Assembly: GCF_036321535.1 (NCBI RefSeq)
Contig: NC_087461.1
Location: 13,020,001-13,084,000, forward strand
DNA: 64,000 nucleotides
Reading direction: 5' to 3'
Origin: Camelus dromedarius
Taxonomy: Eukaryota
Position numbers and translations under genes: made by a program. This document shows, piece by piece, positions 3,105-63,283 of this stretch. Each line of letters opens with the position of its first letter. Position 1 is the first letter of the stretch. The notes under the pieces are model-generated. The model was not told the DNA's origin and did no database searches. It was given only the letters and a program-made list of their open reading frames with translations.

Positions 3105-4061
3105 NNNNNNNNNNNNNNNNNNNNNNNNNNNNNNNNNNNNNNNNNNNNNNNNNNNNNNNNNNNNNNNNNNNNNNNNNNNNNNNNNNNNNNNNNNNNNNNN
3201 NNNNNNNNNNNNNNNNNNNNNNNNNNNNNNNNNNNNNNNNNNNAAACATTAAGGCCATAACATCCTGTAAAAATTTCCATCTTGCTAGATTGTTCCTATG
3301 TCAGTAAATTAAGTTCTTCTGGAACAAGCCCAGGCATCCATAAATAACACTAAGCAGAAACGTAGCAGCACATTTTCAAGGAGAAGAATCTAGTCAATGA
3401 TTATGTCAAGAAACTGTCTTAACACTGATGTTTGCAATGATAGAGGTTATCAAGACTGGTCTTAGGAACAGAGATACTCTCTACCTAGTAAGATTTCTAT
3501 ATCTCTGTTCACCAAAAGGGTTCCCTGTAACCCCACCAATACCCTGACTGCTTCTGTGGAGTCTAGTCATTCCTTAGTGAGCCTACCTTGTGGAGACGTA
3601 CCAGTGTGTCAATAATTGGTGCAGATGAACTTTGCTGTATCCCTCCCTGACATCAGGCTCGGTGAGGGGACTGAGACGGTGTAGTCAGAGACTGCCAAGT
3701 TTACTTCCTCCACACCTTGGATGACATTCAGGCCTTGATGTTACAGAAATTCATGCTTTGGGGAGAAGCTCATTAGAGCCTGTGTTGTGAACCAAAGGCA
3801 ACTTTCAGAGAAAGAAAAAAATCATCCTTTCCTTTTCCATTCCTTCATCATAAACCACACTTTTAAAAAATTTGCTTTCTTTTGAGAATTAGAAATTGTG
3901 TGGCTTTTGCATGTGCACATGGGCTTTTTGGTCAAATGACTCAATAATACTTGAATTTTACTTTCCTTGTAATATTCCCTTTTAGGTCAAATCAAAACAG
4001 TGGTTCAGCTGATGTTTATCGTCTACCTAATATTTTCTCCAGTCCAGTGGTCCTCAAAGCG

Positions 4062-7212: not shown

Positions 7213-8123
7213 GAAAACACAAGTATTAAACCACTTAATATAGACCGTTGGGCCAAGTTTTGAAGAAAATGCAGTTGATACCATCACTGTAGTACTTGCT
7301 TTTTAAATGTCAAATAGACTGTATACTATTTTATAACAATGTTTTTTTTTTCTATTGGGAGAAAAAGAGATGAAGGGTTTTTTTTTTTAATGTGCTCTTT
7401 GAAGCAAAAAGTCACCATTAAAATCATAACGAGAGTTCACATAATAATATCCACCAATATGTAACGGGGCACCGACCTCCATCAAAAGCATTAAAGGATG
7501 TATCAGAGGAACTTGTATTTTTAGGGGAAAATGTGACAGACAAATGCACAATACTCATTGCACAATTTGGAAAGGAACATGTGGGGGCTGGTTGATGCTG
7601 AGAGTGGTTGGTGATATATTGGGACGATGACTTACTAAGAAGGTGTTACCTAAGAGATGATTTAGAAATGGTAATTAAATTATTAGGTAAATGAGTGCTG
7701 ATCAAGTTGCCTAGAAGAATTAGGGGTTGGAGAGCTCAGTGCTGAAGGTTCATGGAGCTAAGAGAACATTTTCAGAGAAAGGGAGTAATCTGGCTTACAT
7801 CTGACTGTAACTGTCTCAGGAGATGACTTCTGTTTGGAAGGCATTCATTAAAGCAGGTAGATACCAAGTGGCTATTCCTTGGAGGATAGAGAGTGTATGG
7901 AATTAGAGTGGAGAATACTGGGAAAGGAGTTTTCTCATGGAAGTTAGCCCAAGGGCAAACTGTATCTCACTCGGCACTTTTCACCAGCTTATCTTTCAGG
8001 AATTTTAAGAAAGTTAAAGCATTAAGGTTGGCTAAATGGTTTAACTCCACAGGCTCTATGTATATTCTGGCTCTTATTTTTGCACCTGCAGATGGATTCT
8101 GATTCAGTATTATAATGAGGGCA

Positions 8124-9790: not shown

Positions 9791-11081
9791 CTTTTAAAAG
9801 AACTTTTAATTATATTCAGAAAAACTTATGCTATTACCTTAGACTGTATGGCATAAATTGAATTCCTCCTACACAATGTAATGCCGCATTTTAAAATGCT
9901 GCTAGGTAGCAGTGCCTTTCAATTTAAAGATGTTCTGATTCCCCTTGGCAAAATAGTGATATTTTTCAGCAACTTCTTTAGAGAGTGAAGGAAAATTAGG
10001 GGCAAATGTTTGGAGAACTAAATATGAAAGTCAACTTATCTTTGGTTGAACATATTGTTCTCAACATGGCTAATTAATTTTAGATAGTCACCAATCTTGG
10101 ACTACACATCCATTTCACTAAGTCAGCAAACTAGTTTTGAAATATTTTAATGATGCAGAGGGGAACCATTTTACCAATTCTGTAACTTTATCGGCTTTTA
10201 TCCCTTTAAATGTATACAAGCATATTCACTGTGCAAACATTTAAGTTTAAAAATCAGAAAAGTCCATTAAGGTGTTCAGTTGCTGGCAAATTCATATCCT
10301 CTTATGCAGTAGCAATTTGAGATAAAAATATTGAGCTCTTATTTAAAAACATATTTGGCAAAATAAATATTATTTAAGTCTAGAAAACATGTGAAAACTG
10401 TATCCTAATTCACTTTAATGTTCCACCATCAATTTGCATGTAGTGAATTTCTTCTTGTATTGATTCTAAGAGGTTATGTAAATTCCACAAAGATGGAGGT
10501 TTTCTCTGTTTTGCTTATTGCACACAGTAGGTACTCATTAGACACTGGATACAAACAAATGAATAATGGTATCACTTGGAAACTCTTCTGTAGACTTCCT
10601 TTATGTCTTAAAGTGAAATTAATAAACAGAATTTTAAGAAATATCCTATAAGGCCAAAAAATTGCAAAGGACTTTAAATAATAATACCAATAAAATTGAG
10701 ATTTTTTTCCCACTTTTTTATTACCAATCTCACTCTAATGACCAGCTAATTCAAGGCCTTCTTATGCTAGGATGAAAAAAGAAAGTTTTACTAAGCTCTT
10801 TCAAAAATTTTGCTCCTGATGGTAACTCAGCATTGAAGATTGATTCTCTTTATGAACTTTTATGGGACTTTTTTAATAACCTGTAGTTTTGGCTTTTGTG
10901 AAAAGAGGGCTATTTGCTACCTCGGATTCACACCTGCAGCTGTGAATACTAAAATATCCTGCACTGATGGCATCAGCAACTTTAGACTGGTTATCACTTG
11001 CCCCTCCCAGCTAACTTTGCTGTATTTCTTCTGCGGAAATGTCTCTGTCCTCTGGAACAGTTCTGCAGGAAGGAAGTGGCC

Positions 11082-11607: not shown

Positions 11608-13019
11608 TGTCTTCTCTAATGACCAATGAAATCATCAAAATCCATAATAAGACATAAAAGAAGAGTGTGGGTGAAATAAGGCATGTTGTGTTAATTCAGG
11701 TTTTTTCTCCCTGTTTAGGGCTCTCGAAATACTAGCATACAAGCAGGTTGGGAAGAACCAGAGATAGTCTTGTAGCCTGAGATTCTACACCCTGCTCCCA
11801 CATTTATAGTCTTTGTCTCAGCAATGAGTCCCCAGAGGTTGGGTAGAGATTTGTTCTAATGGAACTTTCTCGACTCTTAGTTTACAGGGTTTATGCCATC
11901 ACAGCTCTGATGTTTAAGTAAGACTGATTTTTTTTTATATAACTGTAGGAATATTTCCAATTATTCATCTTTCTTGCCCGTGGGAGTTCTGATGTACACA
12001 AGTGTGGAGGTTGAGTTCAGTCATTGTTCCAGGTAGAATTCTTTTTGGCAGATTACTATGTGTTTGAATCTCTCTCCTGAGAACAGATCCCTGTGGTTGT
12101 TCTAATTCTCAGCACCAGTGTCTCTTCTTCATTTCTAGAGACCGTGATCCTCAGGGCAGGTTGTCCAGCCACATCTTCTGACCTTGGTCCAGAATAATTT
12201 TGTGGCCATGGACATATTTCTCTCTGGACTGACCCCTTTCTAATTTGCTTGTCTGATAGCACTCTCCCTTTCTAGTTCCCTGCATATCCAACATCCATGT
12301 TTATCCCCTGGATTCTGTTTAGATAAATGTATGTCTTCAGACTGTACATCTTTTGTTTTAAGCATATTGATAAAACCTCTAATTTGCTACCATTATACTT
12401 CTACCCAAGTCTGGAACTCCTCAGACAGTATGATTGGGAAACGCCAGTGGTCTCAATCTAGCCTATGTCACCCCAGGAAGGAGTTCAGACATAGCTGTCT
12501 CAGGATACTGAAATCTCCCTGGAGCTCTGGAGAGAGGGCTAAGTTTGCATTTTTTTTTCCACCTGGGATCCAGGAAGGGATACCTCTCCACCCTCACAGT
12601 CAAGAACTCATCCAGTTCTGGGGAACTGGTCCACCCTCTTGGCCATTTTCCCCTGCAGAAACCACTAGCAGGAGATTTCCAGCAGCCTTGATCACACAGT
12701 CTTTTTCCAGAACCCTGCAAGATATCCAAGGATCCCAGGAGAGAAGATTCACAATAAAAATTCATGAGAATGCATAAAAATAGAAATAGTTCTCACATTG
12801 CCCATTAGACAGCAAATAAGAGCTATTTATTCATTTAAACAAGATAGTTCGCTTTCATATAATCTAAGATGATTTTCCCACCTTCTCCTCTTTCCTCAAG
12901 CTTCTTATACTCCTTCAGTTTTAGTTGCTTTTTTTTTTTTAAACACTTTTTGCTTATTTAGTTTCTCAGCGCTCACTGCGCACTTCACTGAGAAAACACA
13001 GGCTCACAGACGGTCACAG

Positions 13020-13920
13020 GATCATCTTGCCACCAGCCACCTTCATCTGTGCTCTGTGTTTTCCACCTTCCTTTCTGTTAGAATGGAAGAGGCATCTCTC
13101 CTTTTGTCAGAATCCTCTTGTCCTGTTTCTCACCTTCCAGGAATTTCCTGCCTTCAGTCATCTCTTTTCCTGCAGCATCCAGTCTCTCCCTCTCTACGGG
13201 ACCATTTCATTGGTATGACACAGTATGGAGGTGCCCATCCTAAAAGCCAAAAAACCCTGTATCCCAGATCCTCCAGCCACAGCTTTGTATCTCCACCCTG
13301 CTTCCCAGCCACACTTCCTCAACCAATCTGCCTGCACTTAACCTCTGCCTTCCTCATCCCTCACCAGTCCAGACTCTACCCCTAGAACTCCAGCAACTCC
13401 AACAAATAGCTCCATGCAAGGTCAACCCTCTCTGTGCTGTCGGATAAGTCGTAAGTTTTGTCTTATCTTACTCAGGCCATCAGCAGCATTCAGAATGGTT
13501 GATCACTCTCTCTAACTTGAAATGTCTCCTCTTGGCTTCTGTGACATAATGATTTTTGGCCATCCCTTGCCAGTTTTGGGGGGGGTAGGGAGGGGGGCAG
13601 GCTCCTCCCTCTCTTCTGAACCTCTCAGTGTTGGAATTCTTCGGCACTCAGAACTTGGCTCTTGTTTCTTTTCTCTCCACCCTTGCAGCTTCCTCTGTAG
13701 CCTCTCCATGTGTATGGTCACACAGACCTCAAATTCATCTTGTCCAAATCCGGAGTGCTTGGTTGCCCACCTCTGCATCCCAACATGCTCCTCTCTCAAG
13801 TTCCCCATCTCAGCAGTGGCCTCAGCCACCCATAAGTCCTATCGTTTCCATCTCCAAAATACACCCAGCTGTTCCACTGCAACACTCGTCCAAGCCACCG
13901 TCACCTCTCATCTGGGTCCT
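13020..13920 (+). mobile_element. L2 fragment (a second, antisense L2 piece follows at ~14030-14370)
   Basis: ctcaggccatcagcagcattcag...cttggcttctgtgacat...tgtccaaatc L2 ORF2 text. Confidence 0.65.
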
Positions 13921-16604
13921 TCGTCTACTCTTGTTCCTTTCCAACTTGTTAAAGAAGTAAAATTATAGAAAATGGCAGCATCTCTAATGAGCAGCATCTG
14001 TACTTAAACAGGGGCAGTAGGAGTGAGAGAGAAGGGGAGACATTAAAAATACATATATTTGGCAAGCAGGACAGACAGACTATATAGTAAGCCAGTGGGA
14101 GGTGGAGAAGGACTAAGAGGAAGAAGTCCAGGTGAAGGTGCTGTTTTTTTCAATGGGGAAAATATGAAGGTTTGGACTAGATGCCTTGGTCCTTGGACAT
14201 GCTGAGCTGTGGATAGGCTGATGGATATTCCTGGAGGTATTTGGATGCCGACCACTAGAACCAAGCTTTCAGGGCTAGATGTATTGAGATAGGAATCATC
14301 CATTATAGGTTATACCTGAAGTCATGGAAGAGTATGAAATTGCCTTGGAAAAGTACAGAGATGAGAAAGTGACAGTGTCAGTCCTTCTTCTGAGCCACCG
14401 GTTGACTTCTTGTATCTCCCCTCTGTTTCTTTCAAGACCCAAGTCCTCATTTCTCCCATCTTCCCAGCTGCACAACACTTTGCATTGTCCCCTGGCTCTT
14501 CCCTCCCCAGGATGCCTGCAGCATGAAACACAGTGTCCCGTGTACCTTTTCAGCCCTGTTATTCACAAAAATAAGCACATACATCCACTTTCTTGATAAG
14601 GGATTTGTTGCTGAACATTTTGGCACTTAATAATCTCCGGTTATCTAGACCTAGCAGGAGTGTGACAGCCCTTGACAAACAAATACGGTTACACCTCCCC
14701 ACCCTGGGCATGACTTATCTGACATTCCAGTTATGGTGCACGAAGCCAAGAATCTCAAACCAGCAGAAAGAACCTTTCAGCCATCAAAGTAATGGTAGCA
14801 TCTAGGCACTAAAACTGGGGTCTGTTTCCCTCTATTTTTCCTCTACTCCTAATGAGCTTGGTTTTGTGAGTGTGGCTGCTAATTTTTGCATTGTAGGGAA
14901 GTCCCACATGGAAGGTTCCATCCTGGAGTTTTGGCAGAAGGAAGAAAATCAGATTCCTCTGTAGCCACTTAATTTAATTTGGTCTTCCATCCTGGGTATT
15001 AGCATGGTGGTAAGACAAGGTCTAGATCGACAACTGTTAGAAACATGTTAATAAACTGGACCCCAGGTTTAAATAAGTCTAAACAAAATGTGAAATTTAA
15101 TGCCAAAAAATGCTGACATAATGTTTTAAGTGGGATAAAATGAAGTTGAAAGGCATTCTTTTTGAGAGTCTGAAATAATCCGTTCTAAAGTCATTCCATT
15201 GAAATGATAAATTCACATGGCACTTTCCTTTAGTAACATTTACTGAGTGTGGTCAGCACTAGTATTTAAACTTCAGTGTTAGACACTTCACACTTGAAGA
15301 CCATCTGTATTCTCAGGGATGGATAAGTCTAACTTGGAGGTCAAGGTAAATTTACTGAGTGCCCAGCCCATGGCAGGCACTGGGAACACAATGATGTCCC
15401 TACCTCTACAGGCTTAGAGTGTGATGTGTTTACAGTCTAGTAAGACAAGACCTGCATAAAAGATACAGAGCATTGCAAAGAGGTCAAGGTCAGGTGCCTT
15501 GGAGTGGAGTTGCATATACGTTAAATGCTACAGGATTTCACAGCAGGGAGAATCTGGTGGGTTACAGTAAGAGTGGTTGGGGAATAATTTTTTCCTTCCA
15601 ACAGCAGCTGCCAGGAACCTGGGTGCCCTCCTTGTCGGACTTCTTGCCCCACTCAAATGGCTTCACCCTCAGGAGCTTTTCCATCAACCTGCTCCTTCCT
15701 CTTCTCAACCCCTCACCAGGCAGTTCTCAGTCCCTTCTCTGGAACACAGACACTTCTGTTCTTTCTTCTTCACTCTGCTCAAGTACCTGGGGTATATTGC
15801 AGCTGTTGTTGGCATGTCTGCTCCCCCTCGAGATTCTGATCTTGTTGAGACTGTAAGTTTTGTCTGGTTCATCTTGAAATCCATCCTGCCCCGATGTAGT
15901 ACCTAGAATATTGATAGGGTCCCCCCAGAAAGTGTTTCTTGCCTGAGTGAACAGAGATACGAATGAATTCACAAGGCATGCGTTGAGCCCTGCAGAAAGT
16001 TTGCAACCTTACATTTTTAAATCAATAAAATAAAGACCTGTATCATGCAGGTGGTAATCAAAAAATAAAGAAAATTAAGTAGCCCAGAGAAAAGGAGTTC
16101 TCACACCTCACTCAGTGTGTCTCAGAGTTACTTAACTGTTAAATACATGGATAATATAAACTCACCCCAGATTTAATAAGTCTGCATCTCAGAGCATGAG
16201 ACCTGGGCAGCTGATATATATGATTTAACATTCCCTACCTGGGTGATGTACCAGCAAGTTTGAGAATCATCATGAGACATGAATATCTTATTAACTTGAT
16301 GTCTTTGGGAATGAGGTGCTGCATACTGGTTTTATAGATAACTGGTCCTGGCTCTTGTGAACAGATATTTTAAATTTTGAAGGAAGTGTATGTAAAATGC
16401 TCTCTTGCCTTCTTAAACCAAAGTGCCAAGCATAGTTTGGTATTGCCCTTGGGAGTTCAGGGTCAGCTCTATGGACATCACCATTGGATGTCTTGGGTTT
16501 TCTCATTCCTTCTTTCATGCCAGTCTGTCAGTTATCCCAGCTCCTGACATCACTGTTATGTTACTAATATTTCCGCCTCTCTTGTGCCATCTTACATATT
16601 GCTT

Positions 16605-40051: not shown

Positions 40052-40188
40052 AAATTTAACAATGACTGGTGGATAGGGCGATTGGTTAAAGAAGGCTATG
40101 AAATCGGATTCATTCCAAGCCCAGTCAAGCTAGAAAATATGAGGCTACAGCATGAACAGAGAGCCAAGCAAGGAAAATTCTACTCCAG
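40052..40188 (+). CDS. CACNB2: CACNB2 exon 5 (137 nt): [45 protein letters not shown](S)
   Basis: Poly-T acceptor ttttag|AAATTT, donor CCAG|gtagga; contains the SH3 WWIGRL and GFIPSP motifs. Confidence 0.97.
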
Positions 40189-43100
40189 GTAGGAGAAAAC
40201 TATCAAGTGTTTGTGTCAAAGTTCAGATGCTTCTGTCATTCATGAGCTGTTGGTTGCCGTAGTCGACAATCTTTATTATGTATTAAAAAGCAGGCTGATG
40301 GTAGGGTTTATTGCAGGTATCACAAATCCTGCATTTTAAAAACTTCATCCAGCATTTCATTTTCATCCTCTTCAGGAGAGAATCAAATTAAGTATTATCA
40401 TGAATGAAAATAGCTAAGTTCATAGAGTATTAAATTTGGGCTTCAGGGCAGAGGAAATTCCCAAGTCCTAATATTTTGCTTAAAATACTCAGGTATCGCA
40501 CAATTGTGGTGACTAATCCCAGTGTCTGTAGCTGCCTAGCAAGGCAGGAAGATGTTTTAGAAATGACCATCTCACACATCAGCAAACAGGAGCTGTTGTG
40601 GTCTCAGTTTCATTTTCACTTAAAAAACTCAATTTTCAGTTCTACCTACTGCTAAAAACTTAAGGGAAACTCAATCTGAAACCAGTTAAAATTGACATTG
40701 CAGATAGCAGTTAGATGGGTTATGTGGTAGGCTGGGGCCAAATGATTTTTCTTAGGACTCTTATGGTTGTTCACCCCTCACCAAAAGAATCATTAGAAGG
40801 GCTACTCAGATGTGGAGTGATTTTTTTTTAATTGAATCCTATGCAGACAACTCCAAGAATATGGCTTGCTTCTCCCTCTGTAACGGGATGTGATATGGGC
40901 AAGTCTTCTCTTTAATATGAATAGTGAGGCTTCTGTTTTCTTAAGCTTATATTTTATTTGTTTCTATAATGATGCAAAATCCTTTGTCAATGACCATATG
41001 CTAATGTTAGCAAGAGTTTTTTCCAAGGGTCCACCAACAAGTAAAACTGAAGATGCTTTGGGGGTTGCAACATCCATCTGCATTAACTAGTATCTTATAA
41101 CTCTGAGGCTCTTTTAGTTCATATGGATTCCTCCCTTTTTTGAGACCTCTAGCCCACATTTGACTTTTATTAATCCCTGAGTTATTGGGGACCCTCAGAT
41201 TTTGAGTTGTATTTAGTCATATAAAATTAGACACATGTGGATCAACAAAGCTTGTGCTTTTTTCTTGCAGGATGTTGAAGATCTGATACTATTCATTCGA
41301 TTTCTAGTGTTGCATTGGCTTTATTGTATATTTTTCTATTCTAAGTATTGATAATGGTACCTTAATAGTAGTTAACAAAATCTTTCTCCGCTTCTTCATA
41401 AACAAACTGGGAAAGGAAAACTGCTCATCAAAAAGTAGGAAGGGAGAAGTTTTCCCCAAAATTGTTAAGAAAGCATGAATTCCTTTGCCTCCCAACTGGG
41501 CATCCCTGGTCTAGTGTTAGTGATCAGCTCAGCTTTATGAGAACCTGAAGGAATGGTAGATATTTGAGCCTTCACTTTACACATGAGGAAACAGGGTAAG
41601 AGAAGATAGGGAACTTGGCCGAGGTTGCACAACTCATAAGATAGAATCAGGATGAAGACATAATCAGTCTGTCTGTAGCCTGACCTCAGATGGACTCACT
41701 GTGAGCTACACTGCAAATTGTGCAGCCAGGGCCTGACAGAGCAAGCATAGAATAAATCATTATTATTATTGCCATCTGTTGTTATTTACTGTATTCAACA
41801 TATTATTTTGCTACTGCATTTTTTCCTTAAAGAACTATAAATCATCTGTATTTGAGGAGTGTAACATCTCATACCTTATTCTGAGGAACTGGGTTACCTT
41901 TCCTGTGTATAACCATATACATTTCCCTTTGATTTTTCTTGATTTGATTTTGCCCTGTCCCTTGACCTACACATTTGCCTAAGTATGTGGAAATGCTTTT
42001 ACTGGGTTTCAGAGTTTTTACATTTGTTCCATCACGTTTTAAATACACTTTTGTTTGGAGGACATAAGTTGAATTCAGCCGTATTTTAAAACTCTGAAAT
42101 ATAAGTTATTTTAAAAAAATCAGCAGCAATCAAAGGCAGTACAATTGGAGCACAGCTCAAGAACATGGCATTTTTATAGAATTAAACCTGAAGGGCAAAT
42201 TTGCATTCTGAATGTTTTGATTCTTTGCAAGGTTTGGCATAACTTTACACAATTCAAACAATACTTTGACTGTTATTAAAATTCAAAGAGAATGTAGAAC
42301 AAACCCAAGCTGGAACTGGAATTAGAGTTAGTAGTTTAGAAAAAGAGAAAAAACAAAAAAGAAAAAACTTCTAGAAGAAAAAGTTTTAGTCTTGGTAATG
42401 GATATTCTTGTATAACTGCCAGAAAGTGCTTCTCTAAATACTGCCTTTATTACTTTAACATACTGTCTGGTGTCCTTGTTAAATGTGCTGGGGTATCTTT
42501 CAAGAACCTTAAAGAGATACAGAGGCCTTCTGGTAGTTACTTGGAGCTTTTGATGTTTGTCTGTTTTCTACATTAATACTGCCAGAATAATAGCAAATTC
42601 AGCCTGTTATTGGTATTTTAGTGAAACTCATATTTTCACATTCATATTTATGAAATAGTCAATATGTATAAATGTTTACAAGGTATTAAATATTACCCTT
42701 TGATGCATAGACTCTGTAACAGATTCTTTCCACTAGACCCTGGCTTGGCTGTGATCATATATGTTTGGTAATAAGATTGTCTTGCTGAAATTCCCTGTCA
42801 CTCTTTTAAGATGTTTCTTCCCAGCCTCATCTCTGAAGGGGCCATTTAATGTATTCTTTAGCGTGCTGGTAGTACGCTAGTAAAAACAGAAATGCCACTG
42901 TTCCAGTTTAACTCCAAAGTTTCTGAGACACTGAAGCATGTCTTGGATAAACTTTAGGATTCGGTAAATCTGAAGTGTATGTTCTTCAGAACATTCCTAA
43001 ATTAACCAAGTTGAGTTCCTCCATGCTAGCCATGCTTGAGAAGTGTTCCAGATTCTCTTTGAGGTTTAAATCGTGTAACACCCTGTTGAGTTCCTTTCGC

Positions 43101-60890: not shown

Positions 60891-61235
60891 CACAACTCTG
60901 CCTTCCTGATCTTCCTTCTAGGAATGGCTGGTCTGTCCTGCTCCAGTCTGGCTGGTTTGTTCTCTGTGCTGAGTGCACGTCTGTCGTTCTGGGACAGCCC
61001 TTCCATTATCCTTGGGACGCCTTTTATCTTCTTTTTGGGTGGGAACCCCTTTTTCCTAGATCACTTGAACTCTTTCAAGGTTTACCCTGTCATTTCTGTC
61101 AACCACATACTCTAATAGTTCCTTAGAAAGAGTACATAAAAACTTTTTGAGACCCCGAATGTCTTAAAATCTCTTTAATCAACCCTCCCACTTAATTGAT
61201 AGTTAAAGTGAGTATGGGAGTCATTTCTTCCCAGA

Positions 61236-62596
61236 TTTTTTTTAAAATAAACATTCCATTTATTCACTTTTAAGCTTGCTCAAAGTGACAAGTAAAAAGA
61301 AGATATTATCCATCTTGAAAAAAAGTCACTATTATGACACAGAACAAAGAAAACTTTGAAGAAAATAAGACTTAAAATATCTATTTTCAGACAAATAGGG
61401 AAAGGGGTTTTAGGATTTAGGATTATATGCAGTACAATTTTACATAATCATATATAATGTAGGGATCAATTTCTATCAAATATTCCTATGCCCTGGAACT
61501 TTGTTACTCAGAAAGTGGCCTGACACCAGCAGCATCAGAGTCATCCAGAGCTTATTAGAAATGGTGCACCTCAGTCCCCACCTCCTACCTACTGAAATCA
61601 GAATCTGCATTTTAATTCATTCCTGTGAGATTCACATACCTATGAAAGTGCGAGAAGCGCTGACTGCACCAGAAAACCACCTCAGTAACCGTACTATCCT
61701 GGTGTCCTAGAACCCTATTTGGTTTTTGCCTACTACATTTGACACATAAATTTTACATATCCATACACTGAAATCACAATTGTATATAAATGATATAAAG
61801 GTATATATATTTACCAACATAGATTATCATGTAATTAATTTTTTAAAAAGCATTGAAATATTTTATATGGTTCCATTAAGAAGAAAATATACAAATGTAA
61901 GTTTACACAGAAAGACATCTAGAAGTCTCTACTCCAAATATTAAGGGGGGATCACAAGTTTTTTTTCTTACTTTTCATTGCTTTCTAACTTTTCAAAAAT
62001 TAGCACAAATTACTAGTATAGTTTTTAAAATAATAAAAGTTTTAAAAAAAAACATGGAAAATTGAAAATGGGATAGAGTTGCATCAGGACACAGACGGCT
62101 CAGCAAGCATCAAAGGCAGTGCATTCTCTTGTATCTTGGATGGACGGTTGAAGCCCATGGCATAGACTCTCTGGAGAAGCTGTGGCTTCAGGCGTAGCTC
62201 CTCGAAGGACTTCACTGAGTAGAGAGGGGAGTTTGGATCCCGCTGCAGGACTTCCACTTGGTTGGTGTTATCAAAAAGGTTGCTTCTGATCAGCTTGTTG
62301 AGTAAGGATTGGGCGGCTACGTCCTTTCTCTTCTTCATCTGTCTTCTCTGCATTAGCATTGGTCTTGACAACAGCACCACTGGCATCTGGCTTGATTTTC
62401 TCTTCCTTAAGATTCAAGTTGCTCAGGGACTCGGCCGCCGCTTCCTGCTCGCCCACCGCCAGGGCGCACGAGTCGGTGGCCACGGTGCCGGGCGCAGCTG
62501 AGGCGCTGGTGCTGGCGACCTCGCCGGCCAGCGCGGCGCGATGAGCGATCCGCGATCCCGGGCAACTCCGGCCCCGCCAAGGGGGAAGTCATTCGC
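61236..62596 (-). pseudogene. DDX19B: Processed pseudogene of DDX19B: 5'UTR + spliced exons 1-5 (62483-62097) + ~850 nt putative intron 5 + AATAAA/poly(A)
   Basis: Translation (M)ATDSCALAVGEQEAAAESLSNLNLKEEKIKPD...AAQSLLNKLIRSNL...KSFEELRLKPQLL...KIQENALPLMLAEP; the AAAESLSNL N-terminus matches DDX19B rather than DDX19A. Start is GTG and there is a 2-nt frameshift at 62324/62323. TSD 61226-61240 / 62597-62612. The coding part is certain; the extent to 61236 is inferred from the TSD. Confidence 0.9.
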
Positions 62597-63283
62597 TCCT
62601 CCCAGAATTTTTAAGGCTCTTTTTTGCTCCGTTATCACCTGGCTTCCAGTGCTGCTGTTGAAAAGTACAAACATTTCAATTCCTGACACTTTATATGGGA
62701 CCTGCCTTCTCCTCTGGAAGCTTTTAGGTTTCTCTCTGTTTCCAGTGTCATGAAATTTTTAAGAATATGTCTTGATATGAAAATTGCAACCTTTGTACTG
62801 AACTCCCACCCCCGTTCGTTCAGTTTGGAAAATCGGACTCTTCTAGAATTTTTTTTTTTTTCACTTTGCTCTCTTGTGTTTTCTTTATTCTCTTTTTTTT
62901 TTTTTTTTTTTTTCTGAAACTCCTGTTATTTGGAAGTTGAAGCCTCTGGGTAATTCTCTAGTTATTATGCCTTTCTTCTCCTATTTTCCATCTCTTTGTC
63001 CTTTCTGTTTTACTCTTTAGATGCTTTCTTTAACTTTGTCTTCCAGACTGTCTTTTGAATTTTCATTTCTGTTTTTATATTTTTAATTTCCAAAAACTCT
63101 TTCTTATTCTGAGTTTTTAAATAGAAGTTTGTTCTAGTTTCGTAGATATAATCATCTCTTAGCTTTCAACTTTGGGTGTTAGTCATAGTTGATTTTTCTG
63201 TTTGTTTTGGTCTCTTATGTTAGAAGTTCTCCTAAGTTGCCCACGGAACACTGCTGTGCTCACATTGAAGAACAGGGCATCAG

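What the first reader, a model, noticed from the sequence alone, without database searches (positions are those of the whole stretch)
61226..62612. DDX19B retrocopy looks like a fossil of an intronic-polyadenylation isoform (exons 1-5 + intron 5 + polyA)
Seen on the minus strand: 5'UTR plus intronless DDX19B coding sequence stops at ...GCT GAG CC (62097). It is followed at once by a donor-like GTCTGT and a stop three codons later (SVS*, TGA 62086-62084). About 850 nt of non-coding DNA follows, containing a MER5A and an L1ME-like tail. Then comes AATAAA (61264-61259), 15 nt and A8. One TSD brackets the whole 1.36 kb (tcttcccagattttt 61226-61240 / tcctcccagaattttt 62597-62612) at a canonical TT|AAAA L1 endonuclease site, and the host L1M resumes on both sides. 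Recalled knowledge: DDX19B exon 5 ends at c.389. The copied coding stretch is 387 nt, i.e. 389 minus a 2-nt deletion. Inference: the germline template was spliced through exon 5, read into intron 5 and was polyadenylated there. It would encode a ~133-aa DDX19B with the N-terminal regulatory extension and Q-motif but no helicase core. I do not know of this isoform being described.
Basis: partly seen in the sequence, partly recalled or inferred. Interest (0 to 1): 0.75.

Follow-up and report, generated by a model that had tools for sequence, protein, structure and literature searches.

The report
DDX19B retrocopy ending inside intron 5
A dead, RNA-derived copy of the first five exons of the helicase gene DDX19B, which runs on into intron 5 and stops at a poly(A) signal there, sits in a camel CACNB2 intron; it records a short intron-terminated transcript, and is a tidy but ordinary kind of genomic fossil.

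Summary

- **What the copy contains.** On the minus strand, window 62599-61244 holds the DDX19B 5'UTR and coding exons 1-5 with introns 1-4 precisely removed. These are followed without a break by about 850 nt that align to DDX19B intron 5 of cow and red deer (75-77% identity, E=0), starting at the donor.
- **Where it ends.** Homology stops exactly at the A-run, 15 nt after the only AATAAA in the stretch. Cow and deer keep that hexamer at intron positions +823 and +796, followed by GU-rich sequence and no A-run.
- **Insertion marks.** A 13-16-nt target-site duplication at a TT|AAAAA site brackets the insert. The copy lies antisense to CACNB2.
  - The TSD shares five of the eight A's, so only about 3 A's of tail remain.
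  - The open reading frame ending in intron 5 (…LAEPYVS*) is already annotated in UniProt/Ensembl for pig and a lemur.
  - The signal-bearing block is inverted in badger and absent in a capuchin monkey, so this site is not pan-mammalian.
  - Camelus ferus carries the same retrocopy with an intact frame, annotated as EPY77174.1.
- **Limits.** The camel parent intron could not be fetched.

This is a new member of a known kind, a semi-processed retrocopy. An earlier scan note reports a similar intron-ended retrocopy (CIC) elsewhere in this genome.

The parts
62600..62612 (-). 5' copy of the target-site duplication (AAAAATTCTGGGA). It is preceded by TT, giving a TT|AAAAA L1-endonuclease-type site.
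   Evidence: Cow and badger 5'UTR homology starts at 62599, which sets the inner limit.
62484..62599 (-). DDX19B 5'UTR, reaching about to the parental transcription start. It is still CpG-rich.
   Evidence: blastn to cow L003 3651-3822 and badger L004 890-1062; alignment.
62426..62483 (-). Coding exon 1 (limits +/-3 nt). The start codon is mutated to GTG at 62483-62481.
62376..62425 (-). Coding exon 2 (limits +/-3 nt).
   Evidence: Separate HSPs in deer 12301-12351, cow 12506-12556, badger 7798-7848 and Cebus 15522-15571.
62325..62375 (-). Coding exon 3 (limits +/-3 nt).
   Evidence: HSPs in deer 13150-, cow 13403-, badger 8675- and Cebus 17149-.
62190..62324 (-). Coding exon 4. A 2-nt deletion at its 5' edge (about 62326/62325) shifts the frame in this genome only.
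   Evidence: C. ferus keeps the two bases (P0122).
62097..62189 (-). Coding exon 5 (93 nt), ending ...GCT GAG CC at the 2nd base of codon 130. It holds the Q-motif region and stops before helicase motif I.
61244..62096 (-). Unspliced 5' part of DDX19B intron 5 (853 nt). The donor reads GTCTGT (62096-62091; GTATGT in cow, deer, badger and Cebus). An in-frame TGA lies at 62086-62084.
   Evidence: Collinear alignment with cow and deer intron 5.
61259..61264 (-). AATAAA poly(A) signal. It is the only one in the 853 nt and lies 15 nt before the A-run. It is conserved in cow (intron +823) and deer (+796).
61236..61243 (-). A8 run: about 3 A's of residual poly(A) tail plus the A's that begin the 3' TSD.
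61229..61241 (-). 3' copy of the target-site duplication (AAAAAATCTGGGA).

Best explanation
This is an L1-mediated, semi-processed retrocopy (a pseudogene) of a DDX19B transcript.

Shown:
- The template started at or near the normal start site.
- Introns 1-4 had been removed. Intron 5 had not.

Inferred:
- The template was cleaved and polyadenylated about 15 nt after an AATAAA roughly 830 nt into intron 5. That makes it a 'composite terminal exon' (intronic polyadenylation) mRNA.
- L1 endonuclease nicked a TT|AAAAA site inside an intron of CACNB2, on the strand antisense to that gene.
- The T-run primed on the poly(A) tail, and the cDNA was fixed with a 13-16-nt target-site duplication.
- Insertion happened in a camel ancestor, roughly 10-25 million years ago.

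The template mRNA would encode DDX19B residues 1-130 plus three intron-coded residues: the N-terminal extension and Q-motif, with no P-loop or helicase core.

In this genome the copy is dead: ATG has become GTG, there is a 2-nt frameshift, and it carries no promoter of its own.

Its value is as a record that this short DDX19B transcript was present in the germline or early embryo of an artiodactyl ancestor. The same signal is still in place in cattle and deer.
For: - **RNA origin.** Exons 1-5 are contiguous in the window but separated by 0.3-9 kb introns in deer, cow, badger and Cebus.
- **Intron 5 retained.** Exon 5 and the following 853 nt form one uninterrupted HSP with cow (77.5% over 967 columns) and deer (74.9% over 972), E=0. 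The donor GAGCC|GT(A/C)TGTGTCCTGA is aligned base for base.
- **End at a real signal.**
  - Homology stops exactly at the A-run.
  - The hexamer and its context (GAATAAATGGAAT.TTTATT) are conserved in cow and deer.
  - The next ruminant bases are GU-rich (…TGTTTCTAATTGCCACTTGTATTT), not A-rich.
  - Only 1 AATAAA occurs in the 853 nt and 3 in the 2118-nt cow intron. A random end point would therefore fall 10-30 nt after one about 3% of the time.
- **Independent annotation.** Pig and lemur UniProt/Ensembl proteins of 131 aa end ...LAEPYVS, which is the same read-through into intron 5.
- **L1 hallmarks.** TSD and TT|AAAAA site.
- **Weak donor.** The donor context (CC|GTATGT) and a short distance to the signal fit the known architecture of intronic poly(A) sites (established knowledge; sequence).
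- **Age.**
  - The copy is shared with Camelus ferus. Flanks differ by 0.33% and the copy itself by about 0.44%.
  - About 5-7 replacement changes sit at sites invariant in four outgroups.
Against: - The camel's own DDX19B intron 5 could not be fetched. The identity of the 853 nt rests on ruminant and carnivore orthologues at 75-77%.
- A camel-specific A-rich tract at the end point cannot be excluded.
- Only about 3 A's of tail are not accounted for by the TSD.
- The signal is not conserved outside artiodactyls in the two species checked: inverted in badger, and the block is absent in Cebus.
- The pig and lemur annotations show only the ORF end, not the transcript's 3' end.
Confidence: 0.82

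Rival explanations
1. Internal priming on an incompletely spliced pre-mRNA. The template was a nuclear splicing intermediate with introns 1-4 out and intron 5 still in. L1 reverse transcription started at a short A-rich tract in the intron, not at a true poly(A) tail, so no intronic polyadenylation isoform is implied.
For: Only about 3 A's lie between the last intron-derived base and the TSD. The camel parent sequence at this point is unknown. The stretch is AT-rich (69%) and has internal A-runs.
Against: - The end point lies 15 nt after the only AATAAA, about a 3% chance.
- Cow and deer have no A-run there.
- The two longer internal A-runs (A8, A6) were not used.
- L1 trans-mobilisation depends on a poly(A) tail (established knowledge).
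- Pig and lemur annotation carries the same terminal ORF.
Confidence: 0.1
2. A full-length DDX19B retrocopy was later truncated or rearranged, or is an RT template-switch chimera. On this reading the ~850 nt is DDX19B 3'UTR, another RNA, or host DNA rather than intron 5.
For: AATAAA followed by an A-run would also be seen at a normal mRNA 3' end. Other DDX19B-like retrocopies that continue past exon 5 exist in whales (P0014, P0016).
Against: - The 853 nt align collinearly to intron 5 directly after the exon 5 donor in cow, deer and badger. There is no break at the exon/intron junction.
- A single TSD brackets the whole unit.
Confidence: 0.02
3. The copy is, or recently was, a working retrogene in camels, making a ~133-192-aa N-terminal DDX19B fragment. 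This is as annotated in Camelus ferus (EPY77174.1), where an upstream exon is spliced into the former 5'UTR.
For: The frame from the former start to SVS* is uninterrupted in C. ferus, and a gene model exists.
Against: - The original ATG is GTG in both camels.
- This genome has a 2-nt frameshift and an extra replacement.
- Replacement and silent changes on the retro lineage are about equal in number (about 7 versus 7-8), with no sign of constraint.
- An open 400-nt frame is expected by chance at about 2% divergence.
- The gene model is a prediction with no expression evidence seen here.
- No Pfam domain is detected.
Confidence: 0.05

Closest known systems
Semi-processed (partially spliced) retrocopies and processed pseudogenes made by L1 in trans. 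The textbook case, recalled from memory, is the rodent preproinsulin I gene, which kept one intron.
   Same: Introns removed from an RNA template, insertion at an L1 endonuclease site, TSD, A-run at the 3' end, and part of an intron carried along.
   Different: Here the retained intron is not internal. The copy ends inside it at a poly(A) signal, so the template was a truncated mRNA rather than a full-length one with one unspliced intron. The copy is dead, not a functional gene.
Processed pseudogenes used as 'genomic fossils' of transcript isoforms (Shemesh, Novik, Edelheit & Sorek, PNAS 2006). The citation was seen in the reference list of PMC7290577. The paper itself is not held.
   Same: A retrocopy is used to infer a splice or 3'-end variant of the parent gene that was present in the germline.
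   Different: This is a single locus in camels, for a gene and site not discussed in the literature I could search.
Intronic polyadenylation / composite terminal exon isoforms of mammalian genes (general phenomenon, established knowledge).
   Same: A weak 5' splice site (CC|GTATGT), a canonical AATAAA within about 0.8 kb of the donor, a GU-rich downstream element in cow and deer, a stop codon a few codons into the intron, and a truncated protein lacking the catalytic core.
   Different: Use of the site is inferred from DNA only. No 3'-end reads were examined. The site appears to be lineage-restricted: present in camel (via the copy), cow and deer, but not in badger or capuchin.
Annotated short DDX19B products: pig A0A8D0U2L5 and Prolemur simus A0A8C8ZNJ8 (131 aa, ...LAEPYVS).
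   Same: The same C-terminal read-through from exon 5 into intron 5, with the same stop codon.
   Different: Those models use an alternative second coding exon (…ESVNVILNDGHFVSDK…), whereas the retrocopy carries the canonical exons 2-3. Their 3' ends are not visible to me.
Unspliced CIC retrocopy in RDM1 intron 2 of this same genome (scan note s1-207546).
   Same: A retrocopy of a transcript that ended inside an early intron, in the same genome.
   Different: A different gene. That one carries promoter, exon 1 and intron 1 with no splicing at all. I did not check it.

Membership tests
L1-mediated processed/semi-processed retrocopy | Introns of the parent gene precisely absent | tested here: met
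   Exons 1-5 are contiguous in the window but separated by introns in deer, cow, badger and Cebus.
L1-mediated processed/semi-processed retrocopy | Target-site duplication flanking the whole insert | tested here: met
   13 nt with 1 mismatch (62612-62600 versus 61241-61229), extendable to 15-16 nt.
L1-mediated processed/semi-processed retrocopy | Insertion at a TTTT/AA-type endonuclease site | tested here: met
   The 5' flank reads ...GCCTT|AAAAATTC, so the bottom strand reads TTTTT/AA.
L1-mediated processed/semi-processed retrocopy | 3' poly(A) tail not templated by the parent gene | tested here: inconclusive
   A8 (A9 in C. ferus), but 5 A's are shared with the TSD. Cow and deer have no A-run at that point. 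The camel parent was not available.
L1-mediated processed/semi-processed retrocopy | Parent gene elsewhere in the same genome | not testable with these tools
   Only this window of the genome is readable. Camel DDX19B could not be fetched.
Intronic polyadenylation isoform of DDX19B | Canonical hexamer 10-30 nt upstream of the transcript end | tested here: met
   AATAAA at 61264-61259, 15 nt before the A-run, and the only one in 853 nt.
Intronic polyadenylation isoform of DDX19B | Signal present in the parental intron, with a downstream U/GU-rich element | tested here: met
   Cow intron 5 +823 and deer +796, followed by TGTTTCT...TGTATTT. Not met in badger (inverted) or Cebus (block absent).
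Intronic polyadenylation isoform of DDX19B | RNA 3' ends observed at the site | not testable with these tools
Intronic polyadenylation isoform of DDX19B | Annotated transcript or protein with the same terminal ORF | tested here: met
   P0001 (pig) and P0002 (lemur) end ...LAEPYVS.
DEAD-box helicase (functional protein) | RecA-like core with motifs I-VI | tested here: not met
   The copy stops at residue 130, before motif I (AQSQSGTGKT, in exon 6). No Pfam hit.

The most novel reading that the evidence does not exclude
The intron-5 poly(A) site is a conserved, regulated switch in artiodactyls. It would divert part of DDX19B transcription into a stable mRNA that escapes NMD, because its stop codon lies in the terminal exon. 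That mRNA would encode a 133-aa N-terminal fragment (autoinhibitory helix plus Q-motif) that modulates mRNA export or DDX19B dosage in the germline. The camel retrocopy would then be the first physical record of it.
Probability: 0.1. Interest if true: 0.5.

Novelty: new member of a known kind. Interest (0 to 1): 0.3.

Why it matters
The locus shows, from DNA alone, that a truncated DDX19B mRNA was abundant enough in an ancestral artiodactyl germline or early embryo to be retrotransposed. That mRNA was spliced through exon 5 and ended at an intronic poly(A) signal.

It also gives the exact site to look for in cattle, deer, pig and camel 3'-end data. This helps annotation: the short pig model gains an independent 3' end, and the Camelus ferus 'DDX19-like protein isoform 3' is best relabelled as a retrocopy.

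It does not reveal a new mechanism. Intron-ended retrocopies and intronic polyadenylation are both well known.

Tried and rejected
- **Reads.** No DNA or RNA reads could be laid, and read laying was not used.
- **Camel parent gene.** I tried a full-length homologue search, a cluster listing and a look-up of a Camelus bactrianus DDX19A-like protein. None gave a camel DDX19B locus.
- **Other look-ups.** Look-ups of P0123, P0240 and P0244 also found no record.
- **Literature.** 'DDX19B' with 'intronic polyadenylation' gave 0 papers. 'DDX19B' with 'alternative polyadenylation' gave 13 papers. I opened the two most likely; one concerned 3'UTR shortening and the other CTIF binding. Shemesh et al. 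2006 is not held.
- **Repeat labels (MER5A, L1ME tail, host L1M).** There were no other copies in the window or in 125 kb of loci and no inverted repeat, so these stay unverified.
- **Longer TSD.** A ~26-nt TSD suggested was rejected, because cow and badger show that GGAGCGAATGACTTCC is DDX19B 5'UTR.
- **Bacterial promoter/terminator scan.** It is irrelevant to a mammalian locus and was ignored.
- **Pfam on the two ORF pieces.** No hit, as expected for the region before the helicase core.

Full report
**What is in the sequence**

Read on the minus strand, window 62599-62097 carries a GC-rich leader followed by a DDX19B-like coding sequence.
- The two ORF pieces translate to VATDSCALAVGEQEAAAESLSNLNLKEEKIKPDASGAVVKTNANAEKTDEEEK... 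and ...AAQSLLNKLIRSNLFDNTNQVEVLQRDPNSPLYSVKSFEELRLKPQLLQRVYAMGFNRPSKIQENALPLMLAEP.
- The second piece matches residues 57-130 of human DDX19B in solved structures at E=8e-41, with two replacements.
- The former ATG is GTG (62483-62481).
- A 2-nt deletion at about 62326/62325 separates the two pieces.
- After ...GCT GAG CC come GTCTGT, three codons (SVS) and TGA (62086-62084).
- About 850 nt later lie AATAAA (61264-61259), 15 nt, and A8 (61243-61236).

**Is the 850 nt really intron 5?**

The camel parent gene was out of reach, so I fetched DDX19B loci of other mammals through their annotated proteins:
- red deer L002
- cow L003
- badger L004
- capuchin L005

blastn of the retrocopy against these gave two results.
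- Coding exons 1-4 hit as separate, widely spaced HSPs. In cow these lie at about 3762-3822, 12506-12556, 13403-13468 and 14678-14814.
- Exon 5 and everything after it form one uninterrupted HSP:
  - cow 15090-16026 = window 62189-61243 (77.5%, E=0)
  - deer 14839-15745 = window 62189-61246 (74.9%, E=0)
  - badger 10062-10911 = window 62189-61319 (76.6%)

The three-way alignment shows three things.
- The deer acceptor sits before exon 5.
- The donor GAGCC|GTATGTGTCCTGA lies opposite the camel GAGCC|GTCTGTGTCCTGA.
- Homology then continues through the whole stretch.

tblastn with a full-length DDX19B places exon 5 at residues 100-130 and exon 6 (residues 131-164, containing motif I) 2.1 kb further on in cow and deer.

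**Where and why the copy ends**

- Homology with cow and deer stops exactly at the A-run.
- Both ruminants keep the hexamer and its context: GAATAAATGGAATATTTATTA, at intron +823 in cow and +796 in deer.
- The ruminant sequence then continues with GU-rich, non-A-rich sequence (...TGTTTCTAATTGCCACTTGTATTT...).
- The retrocopy's 853 nt hold a single AATAAA, 15 nt from the end. The 2118-nt cow intron holds three. An arbitrary end point would lie 10-30 nt after one only about 3% of the time.
- Two longer internal A-runs (A8, A6) were not used as end points.
- Together with the weak donor context (CC|GTATGT), this is the standard anatomy of a composite-terminal-exon poly(A) site.
- I therefore infer genuine cleavage and polyadenylation.

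**The insertion**

- The 5' flank reads ...GCCTT|AAAAATTCTGGGA and the 3' end reads ...TTATTTT AAA AAAAATCTGGGA.
- A local alignment suggested a duplication of up to 26-30 nt.
- Cow and badger show that GGAGCGAATGACTTCCCCC... is DDX19B leader sequence, beginning about 40-50 nt downstream of a conserved CTGACGTCAC motif.
- So the copy starts at about 62599 and the TSD is 13 nt, with 2-3 ambiguous further bases.
- Consequently only about 3 A's (4 in C. ferus) remain as tail. That is a weak point I flag.
- The CACNB2 exon at 40082-40192 is on the plus strand, so the copy is antisense to its host gene.

**Relatives and age**

- An exhaustive profile search returned P0122, 192 aa and 99% identical to the query, ending ...LAEPSVS.
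- P0122 is EPY77174.1, 'DDX19-like protein isoform 3 [Camelus ferus]'. It is encoded at L001.
- L001 is the orthologous locus. 6.9 kb of window and flank align with 0.33% mismatches. The retrocopy itself differs by 6 substitutions and 2 indels.
- In C. ferus the frame is intact (EEEKEDGAAQ). The 2-nt deletion and G106R are private to this genome.
- Projecting the four outgroups onto the coding part gives about 7 replacement and 7-8 silent changes on the retro lineage, at sites where the outgroups agree.
- Five of the replacements hit otherwise invariant residues: M1V, W6C, D11G, R56G and V71F. That is about 0.02 per replacement site.
- This suggests roughly 10-25 My, depending on the rate assumed (inference, rough), and shows no sign of constraint.

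**Is the isoform known?**

- A length-restricted homology search found UniProt/Ensembl proteins of 131 aa from pig (A0A8D0U2L5) and Prolemur simus (A0A8C8ZNJ8). Both end ...LPLMLAEPYVS.
- That is exactly exon 5 plus GTATGTGTCCTGA read through. The ORF is therefore already annotated, although with an alternative second coding exon, and I cannot see the 3' end of those models.
- No paper in the held library links DDX19B to intronic polyadenylation.

**How widespread is the site?**

- In badger the segment carrying the hexamer is inverted and interrupted by SINE-like insertions.
- In Cebus about 850 nt, from roughly +47 of the intron to just past the ruminant signal, are absent. The TGA reads TGT there.
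- The site is thus documented for camel (through the copy), cow and deer only.

**Verdict**

This is a semi-processed L1-mediated retrocopy of an intron-5-terminated DDX19B mRNA. Internal priming on a splicing intermediate is the main residual rival (0.1).

The mechanism and the class are well known. The use of retrocopies as isoform fossils goes back to Shemesh et al. 2006, and a scan note (s1-207546, not checked by me) reports an intron-ended CIC retrocopy in this same genome. I rate it a new member of a known kind, with modest interest.

Noticed in passing
window 61216-61228 versus 62581-62596: The host sequence just beyond the 3' TSD (AGAAATGACTCCC) resembles the first bases of the retrocopied DDX19B leader (GGAGCGAATGACTTCCC). 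It may be chance, or microhomology that helped attach the cDNA 5' end.
   Followed up: partly
L001:5001-16974 (Camelus ferus KB017504.1): The orthologous retrocopy is annotated as a two-exon protein-coding gene (EPY77174.1, 192 aa). An exon 12 kb upstream is spliced into the former 5'UTR. It is probably an annotation artefact and should be labelled a retrocopy.
   Followed up: partly
L004:10911-11712 (badger DDX19B intron 5): Two or three SINE-like insertions and a ~130-nt inversion disrupt the segment orthologous to the ruminant and camel poly(A) signal.
   Followed up: partly
L005:19744-19800 (Cebus DDX19B intron 5): About 850 nt present in cow, deer, badger and the camel copy are missing. 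The intron jumps from about +47 to sequence that lies just past the ruminant signal. I did not determine whether this is a deletion in primates or an insertion in Laurasiatheria.
   Followed up: no
P0014 (Balaenoptera physalus), P0016 (Balaena mysticetus), P0035 (Heterocephalus glaber): These predicted short 'proteins' look like other, degenerate DDX19B retrocopies. Two continue past exon 5 into exon 6 sequence, so they are independent events from fully spliced mRNA.
   Followed up: no
window 40082-40192 (+): The CACNB2 exon reads VKEGYEIGF... (Tyr where the scan note s1-191752 expects Cys). I saw it while checking the host gene's strand.
   Followed up: no
window 61218 versus L001: An 11-nt indel (CCATCAGAATT is present in C. 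ferus and absent here) lies in the host flank just 3' of the TSD.
   Followed up: no
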